From contig NC_086097.1 in NCBI RefSeq assembly GCF_963921235.1, positions 69,378,001-69,442,000 on the forward strand: 64,000 bases of DNA, written 5' to 3'. A model generated the notes under the pieces. It did no database searches. It was given only the letters and a program-made list of their open reading frames with translations, and was not told the DNA's origin. Position numbers and translations under genes: made by a program. This stretch comes from Mobula hypostoma. Lineage: Eukaryota. Of this stretch, positions 1 to 60,319 are shown in pieces. Every line of letters starts with the position of its first letter. Position 1 is the stretch's first letter.

Positions 1-620
1 TCCGGAACCTCTCCCGTCCCCATTGATGTTTCCAAGATCATCGCCAGAGGCTCAGCAATCTCCTTCCTCGCCTCCCACAGTAGCCTGGGGTACATCTCAT
101 CCAGTCCCAGTGACTTATCTAACTTGATGCTTTCCAAAAACTCCAGCACATCCTCTTTCCTAATATCTACATTTAAAACTAGTTCTAATAGTTATAAAAT
201 AGAATGGTTCAGTTGTCTTATGAGGAAAGGTTAGACAACTGGGCTTGGACTATTTAGTAGATGTGACTGGATTGAAGCAGGTAAGACCATGAAGAAGTCT
301 TAACAGATTGGATATGGGGAGGGTGATTTTCTTTTTGGTAGAATTTAGAACTACAATTGGTCACTCAATCATGACAAAGATGAGGTAATAATTTTTCCTT
401 CGGAGGGCTATAACTCTTTTGAACTTTCTTCTTCATCAAAGAATGGAAAAATAAACTTGAATATTTGTAACAGAGTTAGATAAATTATTGATAAATGTGT
501 CTGTGGTGGGAGATGAGGTGAAGCAGCACTGGGGTAGGTTGGAAGGTACAGTTGAAGTTAAAATCGGATCATATTTGTTCTTCTTGAATTACAGAATGGG
601 TTTAAGTGCTTGTATTTCAT
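1..620. mobile_element. CR1 LINE fragments (ORF2 piece on - at ~1-170; decayed 3' end on + at ~200-620)
   Basis: Resembles the CR1 copies elsewhere in the window (e.g. tcttatgaggaaaggttagacaactgggctt, a YEERL-LGL-type C-terminus). Confidence 0.55.
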
Positions 621-1155
621 ATGTTAAAACAAAACACCTAGATGTACTGAAACCAGAACAGAATAAGCAAAACTTTCCCCACAGGACTGGCATTTCCATT
701 TAATGCACTGGGGTTGCTGTTGTCAGTAACTTCATCAGTGCTACTGTACTGAGCTCACTGGTGACTCCAGTGGAATATGCTGCATGCCCAAAGATGAGCA
801 TCTAACTACCACATTGTTTTGGACCAACTCATTCGTCTAAATTCATGCAATAATCTGAAGAGCCTCAGACAGCTGGCATTCAATGAAGCTCATGGCTTAG
901 CACGACATGGACAATGACGGGAACCAACCAAAGACAATCAACATTGAGCCAACTAGATCCCGAGATCATGGCGTGCCAATAAAATCTGTAATATTTTGAA
1001 GGCGTCATGCAGGCCGGTAGTAAATGCTGAAGCCATTCGGGCTTTGGCAAGGTCCAATAGTATTAGGATTGGAGATGCAATGGTGTGAGCATCGTCAAAA
1101 AATGTAGGCAAAGAGGAAGTGGCTGGACGAAGTAAGAGAACTTACTGGAGCTTAC

Positions 1156-1189
1156 CGCGCAAGTTAATAATCTGAGAGGTTCTTGCGAT
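1156..1189 (-). CDS. Putative 34-nt coding exon 2 of the divergent gene (probably NUBPL)
   Basis: On -: gtcggtttcag|ATCGCAAGAACC...TGCGCG|gtaagc. Canonical splice sites; continues the exon 1 frame as (P)SQEPLRLLTCA and ends in phase 0. Confidence 0.35.
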
Positions 1190-1339
1190 CTGAAACCGAC
1201 TACACAGAATCACACCAATTAAAATCCACAACCAACAGTCGAACAAAAGCATCCATTGAGGGAGCCCACCCAATCAATTAAAATTGTAACCGGGGTTGAG
1301 GCAGTCATATAACACAGGTGACTCAAAGCAAAGGGCAAG

Positions 1340-2360
1340 GGTTTCCCACTGAAATACAGCGGGTCGTTTACGGGGAACGGGGACGGGAGGAGACGAGACG
1401 GACACCCACCCAGAAGCGCGCCGCCCGGGCTGCCATGGCCACGCTTGGCCCGAGGTGACGCCACCCGGCTCCGCACAGCTGCGCCATCCAACCGCCGGCC
1501 ACCGACTGTCCCACGCGCACATCCGCCACTCCTTCTGCGTCACCACCAGGCGACCGTCCGAACAACAGAAGCTGCACCAGAGGCCTCAATATCTCGCTTT
1601 GGCCTTGACCGATAACGGAAGAGTCTAAACGCTGGCATCACATTTTAGCCTCACGAACCAGTCACCTATTCGTCCCCACAACATCAAGAGCGCGGCTGTT
1701 AAACCATCTAAACCCAGCGTTCGCTCAGGTGCTTGACAACGGCCGGAAGTCGGGATGACGCCAGCATCTACCCATGGTTCTCAGAGGGGGCAAATTTGAA
1801 GGGGCCTTTGGTGTGAACCGTTGCTCTGAACCTTTTTCTGGGGGAGGGATGGGAGAGAGTCGGTGGCGTTCCTCCCGGCTCTTTTGTTGATGGGGACCGG
1901 GCCCGCGCTGGAGCGGTCGGTTGGCTGCCGTGTTTGTGCTGCGGTGCAGGAGGTGTCCGGGCGCCGGGCGATTGGTTTCCAATGATGTCAGAAGTGAGGT
2001 CGGAGCGCGGTGCCCTGTGGTCGGACGCGGAGACCCTGGCGCTGATCGCCGTCTGGAGCGAGGAGAATGTACAGACGGCGCTGGACGAGCAGCTCAGGAA
2101 CAGCCATGTTTTTAAGTTCATCTCGTCGCAGTTGCTGGACCAGGGTTACATCCGCACCCCGGAGCAGTGCCGCATCCGCATCAAGGGGCTGAAGAGGAAG
2201 TACACGCTGGCCAAGGACAGCATCAGGCGGGGCTGCAGCGCCAGTGGCAGGAAGATTTGCCGCTTCTACGAACAGCTGGACGCGGTGCTCGGCACCCGGG
2301 TTGGCAATGAACGACCCGTAGTCATTGACGCGATCGCGACACCCGGCGAGTCGCAGGATA
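1340..2360. promoter_or_regulatory. CpG island / probable bidirectional promoter
   Basis: High GC and CpG; ETS/GABP motif CCGGAAGT at 1743-1750; CRE half-sites TGACG near 1456 and 1757; two start codons diverge ~545 bp apart. Confidence 0.75.
1372..1436 (-). CDS. Putative first coding exon of a divergent mitochondrial-protein gene (probably NUBPL by synteny)
   Basis: Strong Kozak gccATGg in a CpG island; MAARAARFWVGVRLVSSRPRS is Arg/Ser-rich with no acidic residues; donor CC|gtaaac; human order is NUBPL divergent from DTD2-HEATR5A. No conserved NUBPL domain lies in the window. Confidence 0.4.
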
Positions 2361-2510
2361 TTAAAGAGGAGCAAAACAGTCCGCATTCTGATATAAGTCA
2401 AAGAGTGGAATGCCACAATGGCCATTGTTCCTCGGAGGAGCCCGATCATTCGATGGGAGAGACCAGTAACCGGCAATTTGAGCCTCAGCCCTCTACCAGC
2501 GCTTTCTGTA
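1982..2510 (+). CDS. Exon 1 of Myb/SANT-like DNA-binding domain protein (MSANTD / ZSCAN29-like SANT domain, trihelix type)
   Basis: WSDAETLALIAVW...RNSHVFKFISSQLLDQGYIRTPEQCRIRIKGLKRKY...CRFYEQLDAVLG matches the Myb_DNA-bind_4 signature; donor TGTA|gtaagt at 2510/2511, phase 1. Confidence 0.88.
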
Positions 2511-4794
2511 GTAAGTGTAATTTCCTCTTCCTTTTAGAAAGTGCAAATGTTAGTTTAAAACTGGTGCAGCGTGTGGAAGTAGAAATGTCCTAATCGTTAC
2601 CTGTCGAATAAGTCACAGTTCAGTAACTATTTAGAAAGCGGAGGAAGATTTCTAACGATAATGGAGGTTGTAATAAACTTGATCCCCCAACACATGCTTT
2701 TATCTGAGTCACTAAATTAACTTGAGCTGGTTATGTTAACTACGCCTCAATCCCCAATTTCTCAATTTTTAAAATTTATGAACTCTCGACGCACAAATTA
2801 AAGTTTGCAAATACAACTTGATGTCCGTAATTCTTCGCCAAACAGTACTTTTGACGGGTTCTTTTGTCTGCATGTATTCTAATTCATTAGTCACACGTTC
2901 GTTTTCATTCTTGGTAGACTTTTTAGTGTGCCTGTGCCTATGACAACAAGATGATTTTGAGGCATATTTAACTATGAATTGTTTTTCAGGAGTAAATAAC
3001 GTTTAGCTTAATTAATCACTTGTGTTGAGTCCAATCAAATGTTAAGCGCTTCTCAGAAACCGCTCCAATCAAGTTTAAATTTCAAATTATGGACCATGTT
3101 CCATGGTTTAAAAAAATAAAGGTCTCTTTTAGTACAGGAGTCCCCCTATCTAGTGTGCTGAATTCTGGCATATTATTCACGTGTGCAGGCAAGACAAGTA
3201 CACATTTGTTTTCCTCTTGTTCTTGATGGGGCGGGGAACCTCTGCAATCGCTTCCACAAACTTGTTAGGTAAGAATTTTCCATTCCTGAATTATTGGCTA
3301 TGAACAAATAACTGTTTCTTAACTAAATATTTGTGATTTGTAGGATAACTGTGGTGTTAATTTTCCGTGCGTTTTTTATTTGGGCAGAGATAACGTGGTT
3401 GGGCAGTGTTGACAAACATAATCCAGAATAATTACGTTGCACCTTTTGGATTGATTGTACGTATTGGCGCCGGAGTGCACGGATATTTTTGGAACGGGTG
3501 CCATTCACTGGCATTTCATTTTTACTTGGATGATATTTTACATTTTCTGGAGTTTTAACTCGTAATGAAGAATATCATGATACAAGCTTGTCTTGGATCT
3601 TGTTTATGTTGGAAAGATTTTGGTGAGCGAGGCTGTGTCTTTGTGGGTTAATTAATTAAGCGGTAGTCCAAGTTTCTCGTCAATGCACTGTATGTAAGAA
3701 TATTGATGAAGTTGTAATATTAGTGATGTTGCTGAATGACAAGGTTTGTGGTTGGATTTATTCTTTTGTTAGGAATAGCCGTTGCGTGGTATGTTGGTAG
3801 TATAAGTGTTCCCGCTACTTATCGCCCCAAACTGAATATTGAACATATTTCATTGCATACAGATATGCTTCATTATTGAAGAGTTCTGTGTGAAACATTT
3901 GCTGCAGCCATCTAAACACATCCCAGCCAATGACTTGCCAGTGGAGGCATTCAAGCACTCCAGAGTAGAGAAAAGCCTGTTCCTAGTGGATCAGGGATCT
4001 GAGGTATGAGAAACAATTACATTCTGAGTTTGAGCCCATTAAGAAAGTAGCTGAAAGGATAATCTGAGGTAAATAAGTAAGAATCTTCCTTGAAATCATT
4101 GTTTATCTCAGTTTGTTTAAAGGTAACGGAATTTTTAGTAACGTTATTCAGTTATAGAAGTGCAGAATAGAATCCTGACTGGTGTTGGCAAAACTCCCTG
4201 CAATCATTAGAAAAAAGTATTATGATGTTGCAGTGGGGTCACTACTGTGAAAAAGAAAACGGTCTGAAACTCTGCTGGCATCTCATTTCGGAAATGGCTG
4301 AGTGTTTCCAGCATTTTCTTCTTTTATATATCAGATTTCTAACACCTTCTAAACAAAAAGCTGGTAGCATGTCAAAAAATTCTTATCCCATTGTCCTTTG
4401 ATTCCAATACCGGAACCCATTTTATTTTTCTTCCCCTCAACTATTTGAAGCAACTGAGGGGCCTGTGCAGTTTTCATTGTTGGAAGCTCTGGTAATCTTA
4501 GCTGGTAACTCCTATTCTTGATAGTTCCACTGCATAAAGCTGCCAACAACACAAGAATCAAAAAAATCATTCAAAGTTAATTTGTTCAGCAAGGACAACT
4601 AGATTACATAAAATACTTGCAATAATTCAGAACATTTTAGTCTTTTCATCATATTACCATAGTATATTTTGTGAAGATTACCACTGTATTTTTACACTCC
4701 AGGATCAACTGGTGAACTGATACTAGTGATGTAATTCTGATAAATTTTATTTCTGATGTTTCACACCTATATCTCCTGGAGGTAAGTGAATATA

Positions 4795-5275
4795 AAGTTC
4801 AATTAAATTTATTATCCAAGTACATATGTCACCATATACAACCCAAGATTCATTTTCTTGTCAGTATACTCAATAAATCCATAATAAAATAATAACCATA
4901 ATAGAATCAATGAAAGATTGAACCAATTTGGGTGTTCAACCAGTGTACAAAATACAACAAACTATAAATACAAAAAGAAGGAAATAATAAATGCATAACC
5001 AATAAATATCGACAACATGAGATGAAGAGTCCTTGAAAGTGAGTCCATAAGTTGTGGATACATTTCAATGATGGGGCAAGTGAAGCGATCCCCTTTGGTT
5101 CAAGATCCAATGATTGAGAGTCAATAACTGTTCCTGAACCTGGTGGTGTGAATCCTAAGGATCCTGTACCACCTTTCTGATGGCAGCAGTGAGAAGAGAG
5201 CATGTCCAGTGTGGTGGGTGCCCCTGATGATGGATGCTGCTTTCCTGCGACAGTGCTTGTGTCTGTACTGTTGAC
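4795..5275 (-). mobile_element. Rex1/Babar-type LINE 3' fragment
   Basis: CRRKAASIIRGTHHTGHALFSLLPSERWYR...TTRFRNSY C-terminal motif; tail matches that of the copy at 61240-61980. Confidence 0.75.
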
Positions 5276-5689
5276 TGCTGGAACTGTATTTATGGGGGTA
5301 TGTAGTAAACATGTAAAGTTGCAGTAAGGTAACCAATTTGCGTGATAAGTTGTTATTACAATTACAGCATAAGAAAAAAAATACAATGAGCTAAGTGACT
5401 GCTCTTAACTTATTTGTAGAAATAATCTTGGATCAAAAGTAAGGATGTTAACTGATATTACTCAGTGTACCACTAGCAATTCATCACAAAAATGGAGACA
5501 TGAGCCTTTCCAACATCTGTAAGGCACAAGTCAAGAATGCAATGGGGGTAACTCTTTGTTAACCTACTGGGTGCAGCTCCTATAAATCTTGAAGTATTTT
5601 CAGAACTGGTATAACTGCTGCGAGCTTGCTGCCTACTTTTTGATATTCCATTCAACAGTTTGAGCATGATTAATACTTTTATTCTTAGG

Positions 5690-7540
5690 CAGTCCCTCAA
5701 GATTAAAAATGATTCCAGTTATTTATGGCCATTTAAGACCTTGAGATTCTGCCACAAATGGAGAGGGTGGTAGTTGGTGAACCAGAGTGCTGCTCCTGCT
5801 GTTTTTGATAGGCTCCCATTGTATTGGTGAGGTTCTAACAGATATCCTGAATACTTCACCTCTCGTAGTTGTGTGTCAGGGATTCTCAGGAATTTGTTCA
5901 GATTTTGTATTTGAATAAGAATGTTGGGAATATTTTTGAATCTATTACTTTGTGTGTCTAATAATCTCCTTGACAGCCCATAGTAGAATATTTGTTTTGG
6001 AATCTGGTATTGGCCATGCAAACAATGTGCCTTATCAAACAGAACAGACTTAGTTCTCAGTGTTGTAGATGTTGCTCTGAGGAAGGATACTGATCATGCT
6101 AGATTTAGTGAAGGATACTGATCATGGAGGATTTAGTGAAGACCATGTTGGTTAAGTCTTTTCAATGCTTTGAGGTGCTGTATATCAAACATAGGAGGAT
6201 AGAGATCACTGCTGGTAGACCATGGTTTTGTGTTGATTATAAGGTCTTGATCTTCAGATATGATTTTTGTTAGACAGCTGAAGTTATTGTGGACAATGGA
6301 AGTCATGGTGAGTTTCATCGTTGATGTTTGACTTCATTGAGAGGTGCTACCACATTTTTCATTGTTTTGTCATTGGTTTTTTTTGGTCTGGAAGGTGCTG
6401 TTGTGTAGTGTTGGCAGTTTGGTAGAATATGCCTGTATCATGGATCTTGATGTATGGCCAACCTCTTGGCTTCATTGAACTAGTCAATAATGTCTTGGGG
6501 ATTAATCTTCCAGTGTGCATAGACCCAAGCTGCAACTACAGTACTGATGGTGGGGTGACTGGGGAGTGACACAGGTTAAATATCCTATTGCAGTGTTGAA
6601 TAGTTGCATTCCAGCTGAAAGCATGTTGATGATAACATACAGCATTACAGGGAAAAAACATTTGGGGTGGGGGGAGTGACAGTAGTGAGGTGATCTTATA
6701 AGAGTGGTGATGCTGAGATTGGGCCTGTTTTAGCATTATTGGTTGAGATCAAGACATTTATACCGCCATGAAGAAAAGTTGGAGATAAATTTCTGTGGGA
6801 AGCCAAATTTGAGGGTGCTTCATAGTCTTCTATTTACTGTATTGGAAGGTTTTAGTGAGGTTCAGAAAGGTCACATCATTGGCACTTCTTCCTATATATC
6901 TTGAAGTTGTTGTGCAGCAAAAGTCATGTTTTGGTGTACCTCTGGAAGCACAGAATCCAATAGGTTATTGAACAGCTCTCCTGCCAGTGGTCATCACAGT
7001 GAGATTTGACTCCTCTCTTGAGGATGGTTGTGATTGTAGCGTCTGTGTTCCCCTGACATGTTCACCTCCTCTCAGATGTAGTGACTGTACTTTCTAACAG
7101 TAAGCTTTATCACTTCTGCTGGAACACCTTTTGTTTCTGAGGCTTCACCTTTTAGTTGAAAAATCACCTCACTCATTTATTTCTAGTCAGACATTTCTAG
7201 TTGACAGTGTTCTTTTCTTAATTTAAGGGGTCTGGCTGCTCTGTTAGGCAATAAATAATTAGCTCTAAGAATTCAGTGAGGAGTGGAAGTAGGAGTAAGC
7301 CAGAAGGAAATGCTACATTCATGAAGTGGGCTTCACCATCAATAAAGAGCTTCTTTGCTGAATTAACAACTCCTGTTGAAGAACTGAATGTCTTTTGATT
7401 CTCCAACCTGCATTCCCAGTGGAAACAGCATGTGACAGTGATCAGAGTTTATGCCACTAACCTGCAAGCTTGGGTGTTTGGTGTGACAAAGGAGGACCTC
7501 CATTCACCCGACACAGATCCCAGACAAAAACAAACTAATC
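5690..7540 (-). mobile_element. Decayed RTE-clade LINE (RT on -, inverted endonuclease piece at ~7270-7540 on +)
   Basis: - strand ~6790-6870 reads FLNLTKTF..TVNR..KFGFPQKF (RTE FIDLTKAFDTVNR..KFGCP); + strand ~7290-7470 gives KPEG..HEVGFTI..KQHVTVIRVYA, APE-like. Confidence 0.6.
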
Positions 7541-7859
7541 TTATGTGTCACGATGGGGAGAAAATTTAAGTGAGGAGTGTTCAGTAAGGAAGGAATAGAG
7601 AAGCTTATTTGCAATGGGGTCTTAATTCCAGACCAAATGCTTACAGCACGGTCTTGTCAAACTTACTTTATCAGAAACTAAGAGATTCAGACACTGGTAC
7701 CCACAATGACACTCGAGTAGGAATAAACCTGGAATCCTCTCTTTTGAAGTTTTTGTTTCTCTTGCCTTCTTCAAAATTGGTGTAATTCTTAATTTTTGAA
7801 CTGCGAAGTATCTTGTTGACAGCTAACTTGAGTACAGAAATTTCATTATAAAACTTCAC

Positions 7860-7990
7860 CGCCAGAATGCCTGGTGACACTTGTGAGCTGCCCCAGCACA
7901 TCCTTGGATTCTGTTGGTTATTAATGCAAAGGATGTATTTCACCATATGTTTCAATGTACTTGTGATAAATAAATGAACTTGAATCTCAG
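7860..7990 (+). mobile_element. SINE-type 3' fragment
   Basis: gacacttgtgagctgccccagcacatcc...gtacttgtgataaataaatgaacttgaatc recurs at ~19920, 27350, 40790 and 45020(-). Confidence 0.6.
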
Positions 7991-9000
7991 GTGCTTTGAT
8001 GTTGCTGTAATCAAATAAGAAATAAGAGCACGTGTTGATCTTATTGTCACTAGCTCCAATGAAATTTAGAGCAAAAATATTGGTTAAAGGAGTAGCATTT
8101 GTAGAGCATTTTGAAGAATATAAGCATTGCATGAATGTTGGAGCAATTAAATTCAGGTATAATGAAAAGCCCAGAAAAAGACATCTTGAAATTACTAAAT
8201 GAAGGATATCAGAGTTGGAAAGTAGTAAAACATGGCAGAGTTTGAAAATGAGTGTAAGCGTAGACTGTGGGAGACTAGCATGCCACCACATTGTAATTTT
8301 CAAGACTAGGGTCTATAGATGAATGATTCCATGGCAGATGTACTGAGGCTGGATACAACTGTGTGATTTCCTGAATATTTGTTCTAAAAGTGAGAAGGGC
8401 CTGTTCCTGTGCTGCACTCTCATCTTCGTTCTAAGCTGACTTTAAGCAATGAATGAGTTGAGTTGGTTAGTGAAGAGAAAGATTGAAATTTGCTGGTTCG
8501 TGACAGTGATTAGAGTGAATATGTCTTCTTGCTAATAGGCTGGTTCATGCTTAATCAGGCATTTTCCCATGGTGTTTTGATTGCACAAGCCCACTTGCCT
8601 TCAGGGAAGATTAACCTGAATGTTAAGTCTTTACAGCCCTGTGGTGAAGTGGAGCCTTTGAATAGCAGACCCTTAGGACCTGCTTCTTGATATCAGAGAC
8701 CTTTAAATTATTTTTGTGTATCTGATAATCAAAGCTTATGAGAACTGTTTAGTAATGTAAAAATGAAAAATATAAATAAATCAACAAGACTTAATTTTGA
8801 CTGCATTATTAAAATATTGTTTTGATAGTTCACACCAACAGAGCTATGGATAAGAACTACATAATATTTGGTGGATGTGTCCACCACTACTATTATGTCT
8901 GGAAATCCGTGGTTTCCTATGATTTAATTATTTTTCAGTTTGCCATCATTCTTTTGCTTAGGTAAGGCACGTTTCAAATATGTTGTGCTTTTGTTTTCAG

Positions 9001-9347
9001 CTCCCCGTGTTCGGCGTATGCATTCATCTCTACCATTTGCACCTCAGCCGAAGAAAGCCAAGAAGCATTCACTGGAGGACATAATGGATGGGATGATGGA
9101 GAAGTTCATTCGCTACAGTGAAGCTGCAGATGAAAAATTTCTCCGTTACATGGAGGCATCAGAGGAACGCTTTGCTCGTCTTGAGCAGCTCCGCATGGAA
9201 ATGGAGGAGAGGATGAGGCAAAGTGATAGAGAGCATGAAGCTCGCGTTCTATTCATGCTAGGACAGATGATGGGCCATAATATAGCGGACTTTCCTTCCA
9301 CATCTACAGCTACTGAAAGTGAAATAACTGAAAGGAAAGTATTTTAG
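9001..9347 (+). CDS. Exon 2 of the Myb/SANT-like protein (basic NLS-like motif plus coiled coil)
   Basis: Acceptor ttgttttcag|CT is phase-compatible with exon 1, giving 876 nt = 291 aa + TAG; PKKAKK then an E/R/M-rich coiled coil typical of MSANTD/Harbinger Myb proteins. Confidence 0.82.
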
Positions 9348-11360
9348 GCTACCCTTCAATGTTTTTTTTTAAGCAAAGTTGTGTCTTTGTTACATATTCT
9401 TATTTTGTATACAGTATGTTTTCCAATGTGACTGAATACAGGTTCACAACAATATTTTTTAATTCTTCAGAGTTTGCATGTTGAATAACAAATCCATTTC
9501 TTTGGAAAAGTTATTGATAGCTCAACTTTGAACCATTCTTTCAAGGGGTTTAAATTCAGTGCAAGGATTGAATTCACATTTCAACCAATATAACGTCAGG
9601 AGAAAATAATTCTAGCAGGCAGAGTCATCACGTTTCATGTTAAGGTTTGCATAGGACTTAAATAGGCACACTATTTAGGTACTTTTAACTATTGTTCTAA
9701 GTGATGGCAATACAGTGAACATCAAATTAACGCAATGTGATCTTTCAAACTATATGTAGAAGAATATTTTGCATCATCCACTATCCTGTTCTCATTTTGT
9801 TCCCTTTTATTCCAAAGCACTAATAGGTTTGCTGTTGCATTACAGATCTTTCATTCAGTTGTTTTTGAGTAATGATTATTTCACCACATGTGCAGTTAGC
9901 AATGCTTCAGTAAATGGAAATCCTACAGTGCTATATTAAAGGGCAGTACTCCATATTGAGAGATATATTGTTCCTTGGCAGAACTTAGTCCTAATAGCAT
10001 GAACTGCAAGTGAGTGTGTTTTTTTTCCTCATTTATTCAAATATTGTCTGATTTGCTGACATTCCAGTAAGGCTTATACGGCTTTAAGGAGACCTTTCCC
10101 CTTCCCTTTTCTGTGCTGAGGCAGGTGCTCAACTACGGTGTTTACTATTGTCATCTCAATGAAGAAGTCAATCTTCTGTTCCCAACAGGACAATAAGTAT
10201 TTGCTTCTATTTCTTTAAAAAGTGATTTTTAAATTTTTAAACATTGAAGTCAACTTTTTTAGGTGATGTAGGAAATTGAGTACTACTAACATTGCGGTAT
10301 TTGCTTTTGGTGTGTATTTGATTTATGATGTATTTATTTCCACATTGACCATGATGAAATTAAATCAAGCTAATGTTGCTCTTGGCAAGGAGTTCATAAC
10401 TCCCAAGAATTTTGGGTAAGGTATTTAAACCATTTACCCAAATAAGTGAATACAATTGCTTGGAATGCACACTGGACATACATGCATTTCTTTTCAACAA
10501 CTTTGTTCCTTGCTTTTGTTTTGAGTTTTACAGCTAAGCTGTTCTTTCCAAATTAAGTTATTCATAATTAGAATCCTATGAGCCTTTAAATGTGATTGGC
10601 AAATGGTGACTTTGCATACAGTTATTGTAAAATGGCTCAGTTAATCTTCAGTTGTCAACAAAGGTGTTAGTTAATTATCTTTTAACTTGCAATGAATGTA
10701 ACTAGATAAAGATGCTGAAAAATGGTAAGTTAATTGGTTATTGGTGTTGGTTGAAATGACAGTGTTTCTGCTTGCGTACTGAACCTTAGTTGTCATTGTG
10801 TGCTTTCTCTTGGCAGACACATATTAATGTTTAATACTGGTAGGTACTAAAAAGCATATGTTAATAGAAGTTCAATTTAAAGTTGTGTGACATCACTTTT
10901 TAGTTACTGAATTTCATATTTGGTACTTTTAGTTGGTCTCCTTTTTATAACTTGGAAGAACTGTTAAATTACAGAAAATGTAAACTGAAGAAAGATCTGT
11001 TTAGCCATAGAAATGGAGGATTAACTGTTTGCCACTGAAGAATTTTAATTTTTAGTGGAAACTTGCAGCTACTATTGTGTCCACTTAAGATAAAGATTAA
11101 TGGAAGGGATCTGGAGTATGAATTTTCACTGCTAGCCAGTTGTAATTTGGGAGGGGGGTGTCTTTGAATAGGTTGGGGTACAAAGTGCATTTGTGTTTTA
11201 AACAACTAAATTGGATGATTTATCCATGAATTGTAAATAGATCTATTTCCAATGGGAAAAGAATCCATTCTCTTTCACCTTCAAGTATTTTTATAATTTT
11301 ATATTGTAGAATTAACTGTTACTTAAGTAAAATAAAATATTAATATTGAGATTTGGTTTC
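9348..11360 (+). other. Probable ~2-kb 3' UTR of the SANT gene
   Basis: AT-rich with no recognisable repeats; Pumilio-type TGTAAATA at 11232-11239; AATAAA at 11331-11336 followed by GT-rich sequence. Confidence 0.5.
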
Positions 11361-14300
11361 ACAGTGTGAACTCTGTCAATATTCAGAATGTAGGGACCAT
11401 GGAAAAAAAAGTCAAAGGTTCACTTGCTGGTTTAAAAAAAAATGGAAGAAAAAGATATTTTTTGGTAGTATTTGATCTTGACCTTAGTAGAGGCAAAGAA
11501 TGCCTTGTAAACTTTTTGTTGCAGAGAAAAATCAGACTCAAAATGCAAATGTTAAGATCTCCTGTTAATTATAACTAGTAATGTTCCTTTGTGGTGGTGT
11601 TTCTTTACTTCTGTCTTCCTTTTGCATAATTTATTCTGACTGGTTTCACTGGAGCATAGAAAATGCTTGCCACATTGTGAGACCATAAAATATAGGAACA
11701 GAATTAGGCCATTTTGGCCCATCGTGTCTGCTCTGCCATTCAATTATGGCTGATTTTAATATTCCTCAACCCCATTTTCCTGCTTTCTCTCTGGAATCTT
11801 TGACACCCTGACTAACTAAGAACTTATCAAGCTCTGCTTTAACTATACTCAATGAGTTGGCATTTATAGCCATCTGTGGCAATGAATTCCACAGATTCAC
11901 CACCCCCTGGCAAAGAAATTCCTCCTCATTTCTGTTCTAAATGGACATCCTTCTATTCTGAAGCTGTGCCATCTGATCTTGGACTCCCCCAGCATAGGAA
12001 AACTCTTCTCCACATCCACTCTATCTCGGCCTTTAAATATTCAATAGGTTTCAATGAGAACTTCCCCTCATTTTTCTAAACTCCATTGAGTACAGGCCCA
12101 AAGCCACCAAATTGACCTCATACATGAACCCTTTCATTCCTGGAATCGTTCTTATGAACCTCTCCTGCAAAGCCAGCACATCTTTTCTTGGAGAAAAGGC
12201 CTAACGCTCCTCAAAATATTCCACATGCTACCTGATCAATACCTTATAAAGCTTCAGCATCATATCCTATTTTTTAATATTCTAGTCCTCTCAAAATGAA
12301 TGCTAACATTGCATTTGCCTTAACTTACCACCAAGCCAACCTGCAAGTTAACTTTTAGGGAATTCTGCACGAGGGCCCCCAAGTCTCTTTGCATCTCTGA
12401 TTTTTTTTCCCCATTTGGTTTACACCTTTATTCCTTTGACTGAAGCACGTGACCATACACTCCCTGACACTGTATTCTTTGCACATTCTCCTAATCTAAG
12501 TCCTGCAGACTCCCTGTTTTCTCAACATTATCAGCTCCTCCACCTATCTTCATCATCTGCAGACTTGGGCGTAAAGCCATCAATTCTGTCATCCAAATCA
12601 TTGAGATAGAATGTGAAAAGGAGTGGTCCCAAATTCAGCCTTTGCGGAATTCTACTTGTCACCAGCAGCCAACTATAATAGGCCCCCTTTATTCCCACTC
12701 TTTGCCTCTTGCCAGTCAGCCAATCTTCTATCCATACTAGCATCTTTACTGTAATACCATGGGTTCTTATCCTGTTAAGCAGCCTTGTGTGTGGAACCTT
12801 GAAAATCCAATTAAACTACATCCATTGACTCTCCTTTGTCACTCCTGCCTGTTATTTCATCAAAGAGTTCCAACGGATTTGTCTGGCAAGATTTCCCCTA
12901 GAGAAAACCATGCTGACCGGCTTATTTTCTCATGTGCCTCCAAGTATCCTGAAACCTCATCTTTACTAATGGACTCAAATATCTTCCCAACCATTTAAGT
13001 TGGATTATCTGGCCTCCAATTTCCTTTCTTCTGCTTCCCTCCCTTCTTAATGTGTGGAGTGACATTTGCAATTTTCCAGTCCTCTGGAACCATTCCAGAA
13101 TCTAGTGTGATTTGTGAAAGATCATTACTAATGCCTCGACAATCAATTTAGCTGCCATTTTCAGAACTCAGGGTACCTTTAGACCTTTCAGCTTCTCCTT
13201 AATAATAGCAACTACTCTCACTTCTGGCCCTGGCACTCTCAGATTTCTGGCATGCTGCTTCTGTGAAGAATGATGCAAAATACTTACTAAGTTTGTCTGC
13301 CATTTCTTTGTCCTCCAATACTACCACCACATCATTTTCCAACTGATGACTATCCACTCTTGCCTCTTTATACAGTATATCTGAGAAAACTTTAGGTATC
13401 TTTGATACTATCAGATAGCTTACCTTCATATTTCATTATTTCTTTCTTTATGACTATTCGTTGCCTTCTGTTGGTTTTTAAAAAGCTTCCCGTTCCTCCA
13501 ACTTCCCACTAATTTTTGCTATATTATATGCCCTCACGTTTGCTTTTATGCTGTCTTTGACTTGCCTTGTCAGCCACGTTTGCCTCATCCTCTCTTTAGA
13601 ATACTACTACATCTTTGAGATTCATTTGTCCTACGCCTTCAGAATTGCTCCCAGAAACTCCAGCCTTTCCTGTTCTGCTGCCATCCCCGCTGTTGTCCGC
13701 CTCCAATCAACTTTAGCCAGCTCCTCTATCATGCCTCTACAATTCCCTCTACTCCACTGTAATACTGTTACCTATGACTTTATCTTCTTCCTCTTAAATT
13801 GCAGGGTGAATTTGATCATGTTATGATCACCTCCTCCTAAGGTTTCCTTTACCTTGAGATCCCTAATCAAATCCAGTTCATCATACATAACCCAATCCAG
13901 AATAGCCTTTCCCCTAGTCGGCTCAACCATAAGCCATCTTGTAGGCATTCTACAAATTTCCTCTCATGTTCCAGCACCAATCTACCTGCATGTTGAAATC
14001 CCTATGACTATTGTAACATTGCCCCTTTTGCATGCCTTTTCTATCTCCTGCTGTAATTTGTATCAGAGGTCTGTATATAACTTTCATCAGGGGCTTTTTA
14101 CCCTTGCAGTCTCTTAACTCTATCCACAAAGATTTTACATCTTCCCATTCTATGGCACCTCTTTCTAATGATTTGATTTCATTTTTGAGCAACAGAGTCA
14201 CCTACCCCCTCCACCTGCCTGTACTTTTAATATATTATGTACACTTGGATGTTAAGCTCCCAACTATGATCTTCTTTCAGCCAGAACTCAGTGATGCCCA

Positions 14301-14724: not shown

Positions 14725-15530
14725 CAGGTCCACAATTCCTTGTCCGAAATCCTTGGGGCCAGTTGCATTTCGGAATTTAGAATTTTTCTAATTTCTGAAT
14801 CTCTCCCTATTGGTTCCAAAAAACAAACAAAAAACACGCATGCTCAAGTCCCTTATGCACCTGTATCAGTGCGGTGGACTTTAGGACCCAGCGGANNNNN
14901 NNNNNNNNNNNNNNNNNNNNNNNNNNNNNNNNNNNNNNNNNNNNNNNNNNNNNNNNNNNNNNNNNNNNNNNNNNNNNNNNNNNNNNNNNNNNNNNNNNNN
15001 NNNNNNNNNNNNNNNNNNNNNNNNNNNNNNNNNNNNNNNNNNNTAAAAATATACAGCTTCAAACGAACCGAATCAAACACATGGTAAATGATTTATTGGA
15101 ATAAATGTAGAACGTCACTGTCACTATAAAACTTCAGTAACTTGTCTTTCTGTTTCTTTAAATCATATACAGTGGTAGTTCCGACACCATATTCTTCAGT
15201 AAGATGCCGCACAGACACACCAGGATCAAGCTTTTGCAATAACTCCACTTTCTGTGTTATTGGTAATGATAGATGCTTCCTTCTCTTTTTCTCATTGTTA
15301 CCTATAGGGGTATCTGCAGCTCTTTTTGACATTTTTAAAGTGAAATTAAACACAAAGTCAACAGTGAACACAAAATATCAGTGAACAGCAAATGCACGTG
15401 CAACCAGTACAAGCACTGAGCCACAACTGACGTCTGGCAGCCTCTGCTTGTGCTGCCACGTCACACCTGAGTGACGTCAGCTGTTGGTGAAAAGAAAACT
15501 TCAGTTTTCGGAGCTTTTTGGATTTCAGAA
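14725..15530 (-). mobile_element. Internally deleted Tigger/pogo DNA transposon, Tigger4(Zombi)-like; transposase 5' fragment starts at 15332
   Basis: TA then CAGGTCCACAATTCCTTGTCCGAAAT terminus; MSKRAADTPIGNNEKKRRKHLSLPITQKVELLQKLD..LTEEYGVGTTTVYDLKKQK is a CENP-B-type HTH; the CR1 sequence rejoins across it (ctagcacatggta|ctgggaataatccagag). Confidence 0.85.
14896..15043. other. Assembly gap (148 N)
   Basis: Run of N. Confidence 1.
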
Positions 15531-24329: not shown

Positions 24330-24700
24330 GATTCCCGATTTTTCCCGGGAGATTGCTTAATTTTGCTTGCTGTGTAAATATGTCGATGTAAGAAAACCTC
24401 CCACGGTACTTGGCACGTAATTTAATTTCTCCTGTAAAAAATCCAACATCTCGTCATAGCTTGTTTCTGATCGCTAGCTTCCGGCGGAAGATGTATCCGG
24501 TTCTTTCGAGTGCCATGGCGGCTCGTGTGGTGCTGCAGCAGTGTCTCTCGGCTCGGCTGCTGGTGAAACCGGCAGCAAACGATGCAGCCGCCGAATACGT
24601 TCAGGTCCTGAGCGGCGGTCCTGGTGATTGCCTTTCCGTTCGGCAAGCAGTTCAGAGTTTCTAATAGAGTGGGGAAGGGTGGGAACTGAGGCACTGTTTC
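24330..24700 (+). promoter_or_regulatory. DTD2 promoter / small CpG island
   Basis: CpG-rich; palindromic double ETS core CTTCCGGCGGAAG at 24478-24490 immediately before the first ATG. Confidence 0.6.
24491..24604 (+). CDS. DTD2: D-aminoacyl-tRNA deacylase 2, exon 1 (ATG at 24491, or better-Kozak ATG at 24515)
   Basis: ARVVLQQCLSARLLVKPA..AAAEYVQ matches human ARALLQQCLHARLQIRPA..AAQWVE; donor CAG|gtcctg. Confidence 0.92.
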
Positions 24701-24806
24701 AAATTAGTCTCCCTCCTCTCTATTTCGGATGTTGTCACATGCGATGAATATAATTTGCGAAGAAGAATGTTTATTATGTTCTTATAGTTATTTCTGTATT
24801 TTATAG

Positions 24807-24876
24807 ATACAAAGAGGGACATTGATCTACATTTGCTTTTTTAAAGGTGCTAGCTTAGAGCTGATTCCCAGAATGA
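24807..24876 (+). CDS. DTD2: DTD2 exon 2
   Basis: ttatag|IQRGTLIYICFFKGASLELIPRM|gtaagt; 70 nt. Confidence 0.95.
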
Positions 24877-25680
24877 GTAAGTATACGTTTACATAGTTGC
24901 AGTTGTTATTACTTCGTGAAGTCATAGAAACTTGAATACGACCATTTATCACAATTTCAAACATCTGTAGGAAAGCACCCCAAGGTTAAGTTAAAAGGGA
25001 GGGTCAGGAAGGAAGAGATTTCTAAAGCAAAAGTGAAAATAGAGAACAAGGTCTCGCGGGGATTCAAAATGAAGTTGCATAGTTTGTATAGGTAGTTGCA
25101 GACATTACTGTTATGATTGGGTGCAAGGCATGGGAGATAACTAGTCTTTGGGAAACGTGAAAGTTAATCCATATTTCTCTAGCTTGCAAGGAAATTAAAT
25201 TGTAAAAAAAATACAAAGTGATTAAATACGAATCAGATCGCTTAATTCATTTTAATGTATGGATGACTTGAATTTTTTTTATCTTTCAGTTTGGAGCACT
25301 TTTGTGTTATCTATTATTATTCCTCTGATGCGATATACCTGATTATGGAGGGGGTGAGGAGAATTAATTTAGTTTGAGTGATATCAATATCAATCTCAAA
25401 ATACCAATTTCAAAAGTGTAGCTACTTTTAAATTAGAAGTGACGTCAGCCCATGTACCCCGCTATCTACCAGGTCATTGTAACCAAACAACTAACCACCA
25501 CATCCCATAGGCAAGTGTAAATATTTAAGTCACTGCATGCTACATGAATGCAGTATACTTCAAGTCAAATGATTGGAGGTGTAAATTCTATAAATTGTTA
25601 TTTATTGTTGGGACAGGGCTTCAATGACAAAAAGTAAACTTTTTTTTCCCAAACCAATTTCACTGGAACAAAAAACAGTA

Positions 25681-25878
25681 GGATTAAACTCTTCTCGGGG
25701 GTTCCAGCCAGGTACAGGTGTCAATTATAACCCATGTTTCGATGACAAACTCTGCCATCTTTATGAAGATGACAGTTTGTTATTGAAACATCAATTATAA
25801 TTGATACCTGTACCTGCCTGGAAGCCCAATAAGAGGTTATTCACCATGTATGCCAGGAAAGCACTGGATCCTTTTTTT
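25681..25878. mobile_element. Fold-back mini-element, probably Penelope-derived, in DTD2 intron 2
   Basis: ~70-bp imperfect inverted arms 25687-25838; 10-bp direct flanks AAAAACAGTA at 25671-25680 and 25879-25888; related copy at ~47400-47510. Confidence 0.75.
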
Positions 25879-26018
25879 AAAAACAGTATACATTAATTAG
25901 GTTTTGATTTTGTTCTTGTGGTTTTCATAACCTCTATTACTGTTATGAAGTTTATTTGGAATATGAAACATGACCGAATGTTCTTAGATTTGATGTCCAA
26001 TTTTTTTTCCTGTTGCAG

Positions 26019-26344
26019 TTAAAACACTGTTGAATGTGAAACTCTGTGAGGATAATGAAGGCAACCATTTGTCCGTGTTGGATCTACCTGCAAATGTTCT
26101 TATCATACCCCAGGCTACTTTGGGTGGTAAAGTGAAGGGACGGGCCATGCAATATCATGACAATATTGGAAAAGAGGAAGGCAAAGAGCTTTATGCACAC
26201 TTTGTAGCTCTCTGTGAAAAAGAGTTGGCCTCGAACAGTAAATGTGCTGACTCTGGAGTTGTAGTCAAGCATGGAACATATGGAAACAGACAAGTATTGC
26301 AAGTGGACACCAATGGCCCATATACACACTTGATTGAATTTTAA
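26019..26344 (+). CDS. DTD2: DTD2 exon 3
   Basis: ttgcag|[50 protein letters not shown]; PQATL and Gly-Pro motifs intact. Confidence 0.97.
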
Positions 26345-59837: not shown

Positions 59838-60119
<282 letters not shown>

Positions 60120-60319
60120 TAATTTTGCATTTGGGAAATTTTACTTCTTTTGATGAATTGACAATCCTTGATGTATAATTTTGACTTTCTAATATTGACT
60201 AATTTGCTCAGAGTTCCAAGAATGCTGAGTCTCCATTAAGTTGAGGAAGCTTACTGTTTTTGTTAGCTTTGACACTGTATGATCTTTAACATCTGGCTCT
60301 GGCATGATTTGTGATCTAG

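What the first reader, a model, noticed from the sequence alone, without database searches (positions are those of the whole stretch)
1982..9347. Intact host-like Myb/SANT + coiled-coil gene in the NUBPL-DTD2 interval: candidate lineage-specific domesticated Harbinger DNA-binding gene
Seen: an unbroken 291-aa two-exon ORF starting in a CpG island, a 6.5-kb intron that has accumulated old retroelements, and a ~2-kb repeat-free putative 3' UTR. I see no TIRs and no DDE nuclease ORF nearby. Known: PIF/Harbinger transposons encode a Myb/SANT protein of this layout and have been domesticated repeatedly (NAIF1, MSANTD genes); in human this interval holds GPR33, not a SANT gene. Inference: an old, possibly chondrichthyan-restricted domestication that uses the reverse side of a housekeeping promoter. 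This is the best candidate for an undescribed gene here.
Basis: partly seen in the sequence, partly recalled or inferred. Interest (0 to 1): 0.7.

Follow-up and report, generated by a model that had tools for sequence, protein, structure and literature searches.

The report
Shark-and-ray gene tamed from Harbinger transposon
This is a real, expressed and very strongly conserved two-exon gene of cartilaginous fishes, which encodes a DNA-binding protein derived from the Myb-like gene of a Harbinger transposon; it sits between NUBPL and DTD2, which are direct neighbours in ray-finned fishes, and public annotation predicts it under wrong or vague names.

Summary
Exon 1 (1982-2510) and exon 2 (9001-9347) join in phase 1 to give a 291-aa protein. 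It has a Myb_DNA-bind_4 domain, a disordered linker, a basic patch and one long C-terminal helix. RNA-run contigs start exactly at the acceptor (9001) and end about 15 nt after an AATAAA at 11331-11336. That gives a 3' UTR of about 2.0 kb.

The protein is identical to a Mobula RefSeq model. It is at least 90% identical in rays, skates, sharks and Callorhinchus. It always lies head-to-head with NUBPL, and in Callorhinchus DTD2 lies downstream. dN/dS between ray and chimaera is 0.06.

No protein outside cartilaginous fishes exceeds about 50% identity. In Scleropages and Chanos, NUBPL and DTD2 abut with no Myb remnant. In Polypterus nothing is annotated between them.

The nearest full-length relatives (30-37% identity; hhalign probability 99.9% over residues 7-267) are ORF1 proteins beside DDE_Tnp_4 transposase genes. 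Two of these lie inside elements bounded by perfect terminal inverted repeats.

The gene is a new member of the known kind of Harbinger Myb-derived host genes (MSANTD1-4, NAIF1). It is not MSANTD2. Whether the helix forms a coiled coil, and what the gene does, remain untested. The scan noted a similar candidate elsewhere in this genome (s1-142663); I did not test it.

The parts
1000..2750 (.). CpG island shared by the NUBPL start and exon 1 of the Myb gene
   Evidence: GC 54-62% and CpG o/e 0.84-1.02 in 500-nt windows
1371..1487 (-). NUBPL first coding exon. The ATG at 1487 is inferred; the exon's downstream end was not determined.
   Evidence: A minus-strand ORF has an in-frame ATG at 1487. 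In stingray assemblies and Callorhinchus, a ParA/CbiA/MipZ gene starts 336-495 bp upstream of the Myb ATG on the opposite strand.
1741..1752 (.). Conserved GGCCGGAAGTCG block containing an ETS/GABP-type CCGGAAGT core, in the shared promoter
   Evidence: Invariant between ray and Callorhinchus. The reading as a factor-binding site is from general knowledge and was not tested.
1763..1825 (.). Conserved promoter or 5'-UTR block, 91% identical between ray and chimaera; it contains the palindrome CAAATTTG
   Evidence: blastn, 64 nt at 90.6% identity; alignment. A 1-nt indel breaks any common reading frame, so it is not a conserved uORF peptide.
1982..2510 (+). Exon 1 coding part (aa 1-176 plus the first base of codon 177)
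   Evidence: The protein is identical to P0021.
2018..2284 (+). Myb/SANT-like (trihelix) DNA-binding domain, aa 13-101
   Evidence: Pfam PF13837, E 2.4e-19. AF2 helices at 15-103 with pLDDT >90. PDB sequence match to the GT-1 trihelix domain.
2511..9000 (+). Intron, phase 1, GT..AG, with old repeat fragments at 4794-5257 and 7853-7986
   Evidence: It is almost empty in the RNA-type runs.
9001..9347 (+). Exon 2 coding part (aa 177-291 and the stop)
   Evidence: Contigs of four runs begin exactly at 9001. Translation.
9051..9065 (+). Basic patch KKAKK (aa 194-198), a likely nuclear localisation signal
   Evidence: Invariant in 12 orthologues. A basic cluster sits at the same place in Harbinger ORF1 relatives. 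The NLS function is inferred.
9072..9287 (+). Long C-terminal helix, aa 201-272
   Evidence: AF2 predicts a single helix with pLDDT 93-97. dN/dS is 0.028. It aligns with the C-terminal module of Harbinger ORF1 proteins.
9348..11350 (+). 3' UTR, about 2.0 kb, with AATAAA at 11331-11336
   Evidence: Contigs run 9001-11350 in X2 and X5, to 11235 in X1 and to 11139 in X19. Sequence. The blocks 9348-9462 and 11271-11396 are conserved with Callorhinchus.
24515..26344 (+). DTD2, the downstream neighbour, with three coding exons at 24515-24616, 24807-24881 and 26003-26344
   Evidence: tblastn of P0194; homologues named DTD2

Best explanation
This is a host gene that arose by domestication of the Myb-like ORF1 of a PIF/Harbinger DNA transposon. 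The element inserted between NUBPL and DTD2 before holocephalans and elasmobranchs split. It lost its ends and its transposase, acquired or kept one phase-1 intron, and is transcribed divergently from the NUBPL CpG-island promoter. The 291-aa product most likely works as a nuclear, sequence-specific DNA-binding regulator. In this model the N-terminal trihelix domain binds DNA, the KKAKK patch imports the protein, and the conserved 72-residue C-terminal helix mediates self-association or recruitment of a partner, as ORF1 does for the transposase in Harbinger elements. Shown here: the gene model, splicing, polyadenylation, fixed position, purifying selection, whole-length homology to Harbinger ORF1, and absence from the same interval in three ray-finned fishes. 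Inferred: DNA binding, nuclear import, the role of the helix and the direction of the evolutionary event.
For: Gene model and domain. Expression: contigs of four runs from three coded organisms start at 9001 and end at 11139-11350, with the intron nearly empty. The same runs hold only 0.28-0.56 of window 20-2510, as RNA would and genomic DNA would not. Conservation: a 90%-identity cluster holds 21 proteins from rays, skates, sharks and Callorhinchus, and 12 orthologues have mean column identity of 95%. dN/dS between ray and Callorhinchus is 0.063 overall, 0.036 for the Myb domain and 0.028 for the C-terminal part, with dS 0.87. Fixed position: the gene is head-to-head with a ParA/CbiA gene in three stingray assemblies and in Callorhinchus, where Tyr_Deacylase lies downstream. 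Not mobile: no TIRs, no DDE ORF and no second copy in the window. Harbinger kinship: the best full-length relatives (30-37% identity) lie beside DDE_Tnp_4/Plant_tran genes in all 3 loci examined. Two of them are enclosed by perfect 20- and 24-bp inverted repeats. Profile-profile probability is 99.94%, E 3.5e-37, over residues 7-267, which covers the Myb domain, linker, basic patch and helix. Lineage restriction: nothing between 50% and 88% identity exists outside cartilaginous fishes among 5.8 billion proteins. NUBPL and DTD2 abut in Scleropages and Chanos with no tblastn trace of the gene, and nothing is annotated in the 8-kb gap in Polypterus. Precedent: MSANTD1-4 and NAIF1 are Harbinger Myb-derived (PMC9392472), and no Harbinger transposons were found in elephant shark (PMC9179366).
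Against: No outgroup (lamprey, hagfish) or sarcopterygian locus was examined, so insertion in the chondrichthyan stem cannot be told from an older gene lost in bony vertebrates. A gar protein (P0097/P0181) is a weakly supported sister (UFboot 91, SH-aLRT 76, on a very long branch). It shares a phase-1 intron at a similar place in the linker. No MSANTD1, MSANTD2 or ZSCAN20/29 sequences could be placed in the tree, so an origin by duplication of an older domesticated gene is excluded only indirectly. The helix has no clear heptad register, and the homodimer prediction gave no verdict. DNA binding, targets and tissue of expression are unknown. The runs are only guessed to be RNA by their record, although their behaviour fits RNA.
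Confidence: 0.8

Rival explanations
1. The gene has the same Harbinger origin but is older. Domestication happened in a jawed-vertebrate ancestor, and the gene was then lost or moved in bony vertebrates. The gar gene next to a RasGEF gene would be its diverged, relocated counterpart.
For: Gar P0097/P0181 groups with the chondrichthyan clade (91/76). It has a phase-1 intron at aa 174, against aa 176 here. It is conserved between two gar genera. MSANTD1, MSANTD2, MSANTD4 and NAIF1 all date to the base of jawed vertebrates (PMC9392472).
Against: The gar branch is very long (2.74) and support is below the tool's thresholds. Identity is only 32%, while the chondrichthyan gene changes by about 10% over the holocephalan-elasmobranch split. 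The gar locus shows no NUBPL or DTD2 within 10 kb. A Harbinger ORF1 in Diadema also has linker introns, so the intron may come from the transposon. Teleost loci show NUBPL and DTD2 sharing one short divergent interval, which looks like an undisturbed state.
Confidence: 0.17
2. It is a duplicate (paralogue) of an already domesticated host gene such as MSANTD1, MSANTD2 or a ZSCAN20/29-type Myb domain, not a separate capture from a transposon.
For: RefSeq names some orthologues MSANTD2, ZSCAN29-like or ZKSCAN2-like. MSANTD1 (278 aa) has the same Myb-plus-C-terminal-helix layout and aligns over residues 1-271 of the model.
Against: Identity to MSANTD1 is 18-20% and to MSANTD2 25-29% over the Myb domain only, which is lower than to transposon ORF1 proteins (33-34% over about 265 residues). 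No SCAN domain or zinc finger is present. MSANTD2 is 556-559 aa. The published study found no co-duplicated flanks among MSANTD genes (PMC9392472).
Confidence: 0.03

Closest known systems
MSANTD1 (Harbinger Myb-like-derived host gene of jawed vertebrates; PMC9392472)
   Same: It is of similar size (278 against 291 aa). It has the same Pfam domain type (Myb_DNA-bind_4 group) and the same layout: an N-terminal trihelix domain, a disordered linker and a C-terminal long helix. Foldseek aligns residues 1-271. It has the same kind of origin.
   Different: Identity in the structural alignment is only 18-20%. The paper places it at a different locus (human chromosome 4) and reports it present from cartilaginous fishes to mammals. 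The gene here is found only in cartilaginous fishes, at the NUBPL-DTD2 site.
MSANTD2 (the name RefSeq gives several orthologues)
   Same: It has a Myb_DNA-bind_4 domain with a similar GY.RTP.QCR.RIK.L+R.Y stretch and a Harbinger Myb-like origin (PMC9392472).
   Different: MSANTD2 is 556-559 aa with a large extra C-terminal region. Only the Myb domain aligns, at 25-29% identity. The locus is different, so the RefSeq name is a misnomer.
ORF1 (Myb-like protein) of PIF/Harbinger transposons, e.g. the elements in L003 (Diadema), L004 and L002 (Haliotis)
   Same: Homology runs the whole length: Myb domain, LG.RPA motif, acidic/Ser linker, basic patch and C-terminal helix with the EER.R.E.REH...ML motif.
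   Different: The transposon ORF1 lies inside TIR-bounded elements with a convergent DDE_Tnp_4 gene. The gene here has no TIRs and no transposase. It has a fixed position, a 6.5-kb intron, a CpG-island promoter, and dN/dS of 0.06.
NAIF1 / HARBI1 pair and Arabidopsis ALP2/ALP1 and HDP2/HDP1
   Same: These are domesticated Harbinger Myb-like proteins that kept DNA binding and binding of a transposase-derived partner (PMC9392472, section 14). They are a model for what the C-terminal helix may do.
   Different: By my own knowledge of the family, NAIF1 belongs to the other Myb subgroup (Myb_DNA-bind_5). No partner gene was found or tested here.
Plant trihelix factors GT-3a/GT-3b
   Same: They are the best Foldseek matches (E 4e-6 to 9e-6) and align over both the trihelix domain and the C-terminal helix. 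The GT-1 domain is the only PDB sequence match.
   Different: Identity is 18-21%. They are plant host transcription factors, so the resemblance is of fold and layout, not close kinship.

Membership tests
Harbinger Myb-like-derived host genes (MSANTD/NAIF1 kind, sensu PMC9392472) | Myb/SANT trihelix domain homologous to Harbinger ORF1 | tested here: met
   PF13837, E 2.4e-19. hhalign probability 99.94% against ORF1 proteins that lie next to DDE_Tnp_4 genes.
Harbinger Myb-like-derived host genes (MSANTD/NAIF1 kind, sensu PMC9392472) | Closest relatives outside the orthologue group are transposon-borne | tested here: met
   All 3 loci of best full-length relatives carry a DDE_Tnp_4 ORF 1.8-5 kb away on the opposite strand. 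Two are enclosed by perfect TIRs. Only three loci were sampled.
Harbinger Myb-like-derived host genes (MSANTD/NAIF1 kind, sensu PMC9392472) | Same genomic position in divergent species; no TIRs or transposase of its own | tested here: met
   (three stingray assemblies and Callorhinchus).
Harbinger Myb-like-derived host genes (MSANTD/NAIF1 kind, sensu PMC9392472) | Purifying selection and expression | tested here: met
   dN/dS 0.063. Spliced, polyadenylated transcript contigs.
MSANTD2 orthologue | Protein of about 559 aa with a conserved region after the Myb domain; high identity across vertebrates | tested here: not met
   The protein is 291 aa. Foldseek aligns only residues 9-204 to MSANTD2, at 25-29% identity. 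No non-chondrichthyan protein exceeds 50% identity.
MSANTD2 orthologue | Synteny with the MSANTD2 locus | not tested
   The neighbours here are NUBPL and DTD2. The flanks of shark MSANTD2 could not be fetched. The paper reports MSANTD2 in cartilaginous fishes at its own conserved locus.
MSANTD1 orthologue | One-to-one sequence relationship and shared locus | tested here: inconclusive
   The layout is the same, but identity is 18-20%. The MSANTD1 sequence could not be put in a tree. The locus differs according to the paper.
ZSCAN20/ZSCAN29/ZKSCAN2 | SCAN (and KRAB) domain plus C2H2 zinc fingers | tested here: not met
   Pfam finds only Myb_DNA-bind_4 in exon 1 and nothing in exon 2.
Autonomous PIF/Harbinger transposon | TIRs, 3-bp target duplication, DDE_Tnp_4 transposase, multiple copies | tested here: not met
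   No flanking inverted repeats. No DDE hit and a single copy in 64 kb. Genome-wide copy number was not testable.
Coiled-coil dimerising protein | Heptad repeat with hydrophobic a/d positions; self-association | tested here: inconclusive
   A long helix is predicted. The best heptad register has 41% core residues against a 34% background. The complex prediction gave no verdict.

The most novel reading that the evidence does not exclude
The transposon landed inside an ancestral NUBPL/DTD2 bidirectional promoter, the state still seen in teleosts, where the two start codons are 330-460 bp apart. The captured Myb gene took over the DTD2 side of that CpG island, and DTD2 was pushed 22 kb away onto a promoter of its own. 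The result is a cartilaginous-fish-only transcription factor that has been almost frozen for more than 400 million years (divergence date from general knowledge). If so, this would be a clean, datable example of promoter capture creating a lineage-specific regulator, possibly one that still works with a HARBI1-type partner.
Probability: 0.3. Interest if true: 0.6.

Novelty: new member of a known kind. Interest (0 to 1): 0.45.

Why it matters
Harbinger Myb-like genes have been tamed repeatedly in vertebrates (MSANTD1-4, NAIF1), but the published survey started from human proteins and could not see lineage-specific cases. This gene adds one that is confined, at least at this locus, to cartilaginous fishes. 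It is more conserved than its housekeeping neighbour DTD2: about 90% against 79% identity between ray and chimaera. That level of constraint points to an essential and still unknown regulatory role. It also corrects misleading database names (MSANTD2, ZSCAN29-like, ZKSCAN2-like, trihelix GT-3a-like). Finally, it offers a simple before-and-after locus comparison for how a transposon gene acquires a host promoter.

Tried and rejected
1. Homodimer prediction of the exon-2 product (two copies) gave no verdict (score 0.01). This is not evidence either way.

2. Heptad analysis found no clear register, so I do not call the helix a coiled coil.

3. I considered a conserved upstream ORF starting at 1774 (MVLRGGKFEG...). 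I rejected it because a 1-nt indel in Callorhinchus shifts the frame after 10 codons.

4. I considered the conserved promoter block as a relic Harbinger TIR, because it shares GCCCCTT with the L004 TIR. I rejected this as a 7-mer chance match in the wrong orientation.

5. The sturgeon locus L006 was uninformative: 8,373 of the 10,000 upstream bases are N, and I left them as they are.

6. The look-ups for Latimeria DTD2 and salmon P0088 found no record.

8. The first look-up of sequencing runs attempt failed because the machine was busy.

9. MSANTD1, MSANTD2 and ZSCAN20/29 sequences could not be obtained as tool references, so they are missing from the tree.

10. The ESM Atlas search gave only generic Myb_DNA-bind_4 clusters.

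11. Read laying could not span both splice sites within 6,000 letters, so the exon 1-exon 2 joint itself was not seen. Only the exact acceptor boundary was seen, together with the 658-2,492 extra 5' letters of the contigs.

Full report
**1. The observation**

The window holds an ATG at 1982, inside a CpG island that spans about 1000-2750 (GC 54-62%, CpG o/e 0.84-1.02). The reading frame stays open to a GTAAGT donor after 2510. A polypyrimidine tract and an AG end at 9000, and the frame continues from 9001 to a stop at 9345-9347. Joining 1982-2510 to 9001-9347 gives 876 nt and 291 codons, with the intron in phase 1.

Exon 1 carries a Myb_DNA-bind_4 domain (PF13837, residues 13-101, E 2.4e-19). 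Exon 2 matches no Pfam family. The only PDB sequence matches of note are the GT-1 trihelix domain structures.

The 6,490-nt intron holds at least two diverged dispersed-repeat fragments. The exons and the 3' UTR match nothing else in the window. No inverted repeats flank the gene. No DDE transposase and no second copy lie in the 64 kb.

**2. It is transcribed, spliced and polyadenylated**

Four public runs from three coded organisms were laid on 6500-12400. Each has one long contig that begins exactly at 9001. The contigs end at 11350 (X2, X5), 11235 (X1) or 11139 (X19), and the intron upstream is almost empty. An AATAAA lies at 11331-11336, 14 nt before the common contig end. The 130 nt around it are 84% identical to Callorhinchus.

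The records only guess that these runs are RNA. Their behaviour fits RNA, because they hold all sampled words of 9001-10800 but only 0.28-0.56 of 20-2510. Genomic DNA would hold all of both.

The X1 and X2 contigs carry 2,491-2,492 more letters 5' of 9001, and the X19 contig carries 658. The 0.46 share in X1 equals what exon 1, the 494-bp intergenic stretch and NUBPL exon 1 would give together. The long contigs may therefore be the Myb and NUBPL mRNAs joined head-to-head by the assembler. This is inference, because the single read-laying run could not also cover the 5' side. The 2510-9001 joint itself was not seen directly.

**3. Conservation and position**

The protein is identical to a RefSeq model of Mobula hypostoma (P0021). 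It differs at 2 residues from stingray P0001. A 90%-identity cluster of 21 proteins covers stingrays, sawfish, skates, many sharks and the chimaera Callorhinchus. Its names are as varied as MSANTD2, ZKSCAN2-like, ZSCAN29-like, trihelix GT-3a-like and 'uncharacterized'.

Twelve 290/291-aa orthologues have a mean column identity of 95%. The Myb domain and the segment 191-270 are almost invariant.

I recovered the Callorhinchus CDS from L001. It has the same two exons, the same phase and GT..AG boundaries. Nei-Gojobori estimates against the window are as follows:

| Region | dN/dS |
|---|---|
| Whole CDS (dS 0.87, dN 0.054) | 0.063 |
| Myb domain | 0.036 |
| Linker | 0.098 |
| C-terminal part | 0.028 |

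For comparison, the last exon of the neighbouring DTD2 is 79% identical between the same two lineages, against about 90% for this protein.

In three stingray assemblies and in Callorhinchus, the gene lies head-to-head with a ParA/CbiA/MipZ gene (NUBPL) whose coding start is 336-495 bp away. In Callorhinchus a Tyr_Deacylase gene (DTD2) follows on the same strand. In the window the NUBPL ATG is inferred at 1487 on the minus strand, and the DTD2 exons lie at 24515-26344.

**4. Absence elsewhere**

Word-indexed searches of 5.8 billion proteins were run with exon 1 and with the full protein. Outside cartilaginous fishes they found nothing above 50% local identity.

DTD2 proteins were used as anchors for the locus in ray-finned fishes:
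- In Scleropages (L007, L008) and Chanos (L009), NUBPL and DTD2 lie head-to-head. In L007 and L009 their coding starts are only 330-460 bp apart.
- In Polypterus they are 8 kb apart with no gene called between them.
- tblastn of the protein against the teleost loci found nothing.
- The sturgeon locus is masked and was left so.

Sarcopterygian and jawless-fish loci could not be examined.

**5. What it is related to**

An exhaustive HMMER search of 1.84 billion representatives gave 2,035 hits. Apart from the gene's own isoforms, the best are multi-Myb proteins that match only the domain. The best whole-length matches have 30-37% identity. They come from sea urchins, abalones, an unnamed ENA assembly, killifish and gar.

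I fetched three whole-length relatives with their DNA:
- **Diadema, L003.** A DDE_Tnp_4/Plant_tran gene lies 5 kb downstream on the opposite strand. Both genes sit between perfect 24-bp inverted repeats.
- **ENA contig, L004.** The same arrangement lies between perfect 20-bp inverted repeats at 7712-7731 and 12699-12718, with AAT on both outer sides.
- **Haliotis, L002.** An uncalled 363-aa ORF 1.8 kb downstream is DDE_Tnp_4 (E 1e-28).

The relatives are therefore Harbinger ORF1 proteins.

A profile of the 12 orthologues against a profile of seven such ORF1 proteins gives probability 99.94% and E 3.5e-37 over residues 7-267. That span covers the Myb domain, the LG.RPA motif, the linker, the basic patch and the C-terminal helix. 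So the whole ORF1 was inherited, not only a domain.

**6. Comparison with named genes**

The AlphaFold model was built from a 39-row alignment and has a mean pLDDT of 69. It has a confident helical domain at 8-105, a disordered stretch at 107-193 and one helix at 201-272. Foldseek against Swiss-Prot models gives the matches below.

| Match | Length | Identity | Extent of match |
|---|---|---|---|
| Plant GT-3b / GT-3a | 289 / 323 aa | 18-21% | Trihelix domain and C-terminal helix |
| Human MSANTD7 | 361 aa | 20% | Residues 2-273 |
| MSANTD1 | 278 aa | 18-20% | Same layout, residues 1-271 |
| MSANTD2 | 556-559 aa | 25-29% | Myb domain only |
| ZSCAN20 | 1,030-1,043 aa | 23-25% | Human: 10-210; mouse: 1-287 |

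Etchegaray et al. (PMC9392472) showed that MSANTD1-4 and NAIF1 derive from Harbinger Myb-like genes by three to five captures. They found MSANTD1, MSANTD2, MSANTD4, NAIF1 and HARBI1 from cartilaginous fishes to mammals, at their own conserved loci. Their screen started from human proteins, and the paper mentions neither this gene nor NUBPL. A companion paper found no Harbinger transposons in the elephant shark genome (PMC9179366). That fits an old, immobile gene.

The gene is thus another member of this kind and not an orthologue of a named one. The RefSeq label MSANTD2 is a best-hit artefact.

**7. Tree and a caveat**

In a maximum-likelihood tree of 43 proteins, the chondrichthyan sequences form a very tight clade on a 0.75 stem. 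Their nearest neighbour is the gar protein P0097, with support 91/76 and a 2.74-long branch. The next groups are a clade of NAXD-adjacent teleost proteins with an elephant protein, and the abalone ORF1 clade.

The gar gene sits beside a RasGEF gene, not beside NUBPL or DTD2. However, it has a phase-1 intron at residue 174, against 176 here. The Diadema ORF1 also has linker introns, so the intron may be a legacy of the transposon. An older origin with relocation in gar and loss elsewhere remains possible, and I give it about 0.17.

**8. Mechanism**

By homology with trihelix factors and Harbinger ORF1, the N-terminal domain should bind DNA sequence-specifically. The invariant KKAKK patch should act in nuclear import. 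The invariant helix should bind protein, either itself or a partner. In Harbinger elements, ORF1 binds the transposon ends and the transposase. NAIF1 does the same with HARBI1 (as summarised in PMC9392472, section 14).

None of this was tested. The helix lacks a clear heptad register, and the homodimer prediction gave no verdict.

The promoter holds three blocks conserved with Callorhinchus:
- a CCGGAAGT core at 1741-1752;
- a 64-bp block at 1763-1825;
- the start-codon context.

**9. Verdict**

It is a new member of a known kind and is already predicted, under wrong names, in public annotation. No paper describing it was found in the library searches made here. Another first-stage note (s1-142663) reports a similar candidate elsewhere in this genome; I did not test it.

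Noticed in passing
window 1763-1825 (core about 1768-1812): A promoter or 5'-UTR block that is about 91% identical between ray and Callorhinchus. It contains the perfect palindrome CAAATTTG flanked by G-runs. No factor could be assigned, and it might be a binding site for the gene's own product.
   Followed up: partly
window 11680-12400: A dispersed repeat just past the gene's poly(A) site. It has enormous depth in all RNA-type runs (thousands to tens of thousands) and hundreds of heterogeneous joints, so it is a highly transcribed SINE-like family.
   Followed up: no
P0065 (Nothobranchius, 624 aa) and P0088 (Oncorhynchus nerka, 438 aa): In killifishes and a salmonid, a Myb-plus-helix protein of this family (37-42% identity) is predicted as the N-terminal part of NAXD (NAD(P)HX dehydratase) isoforms. 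This suggests a separate, teleost-wide domesticated Myb gene just upstream of naxd, or a read-through fusion.
   Followed up: partly
L005 10001-13066 (spotted gar): A three-exon Myb-plus-helix gene (305 aa), conserved in Atractosteus, lies next to a RasGEF gene. Its last intron is phase 1 at residue 174, close to the intron position of the chondrichthyan gene.
   Followed up: partly
L004 7712-12718 and L003 7504-18435: Two apparently intact Harbinger elements with perfect 20- and 24-bp terminal inverted repeats. Both termini share the motif G(C/G)C(C/T)TTTTACAC, although they come from different organisms. L003 also has subterminal copies of the motif.
   Followed up: partly
window 15093-15371 (-): An ORF whose translation (…KRRKHLSLPITQKVELLQKLD…GVGTTTVYDLKKQKDKL…) looks like the N-terminal helix-turn-helix of a pogo/Tigger-type transposase. 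It lies next to a run of N at about 14.9-15.05 kb, which was left untouched.
   Followed up: no
P0002-P0005, P0008 (sharks): RefSeq predicts shark isoforms that replace exon 2 with alternative intronic exons and so lack the helix. One Cetorhinus isoform skips the linker (residues 122-176). X5 record 27 spans 8916-9028 at low depth, which may be unspliced or alternative RNA.
   Followed up: no
window 59850-60122 (+) and L007 19685-22086: A HEATR5A-type exon lies downstream of DTD2 in the window, and HEATR5A follows DTD2 in Scleropages. The wider NUBPL-DTD2-HEATR5A order is therefore conserved between rays and teleosts.
   Followed up: partly
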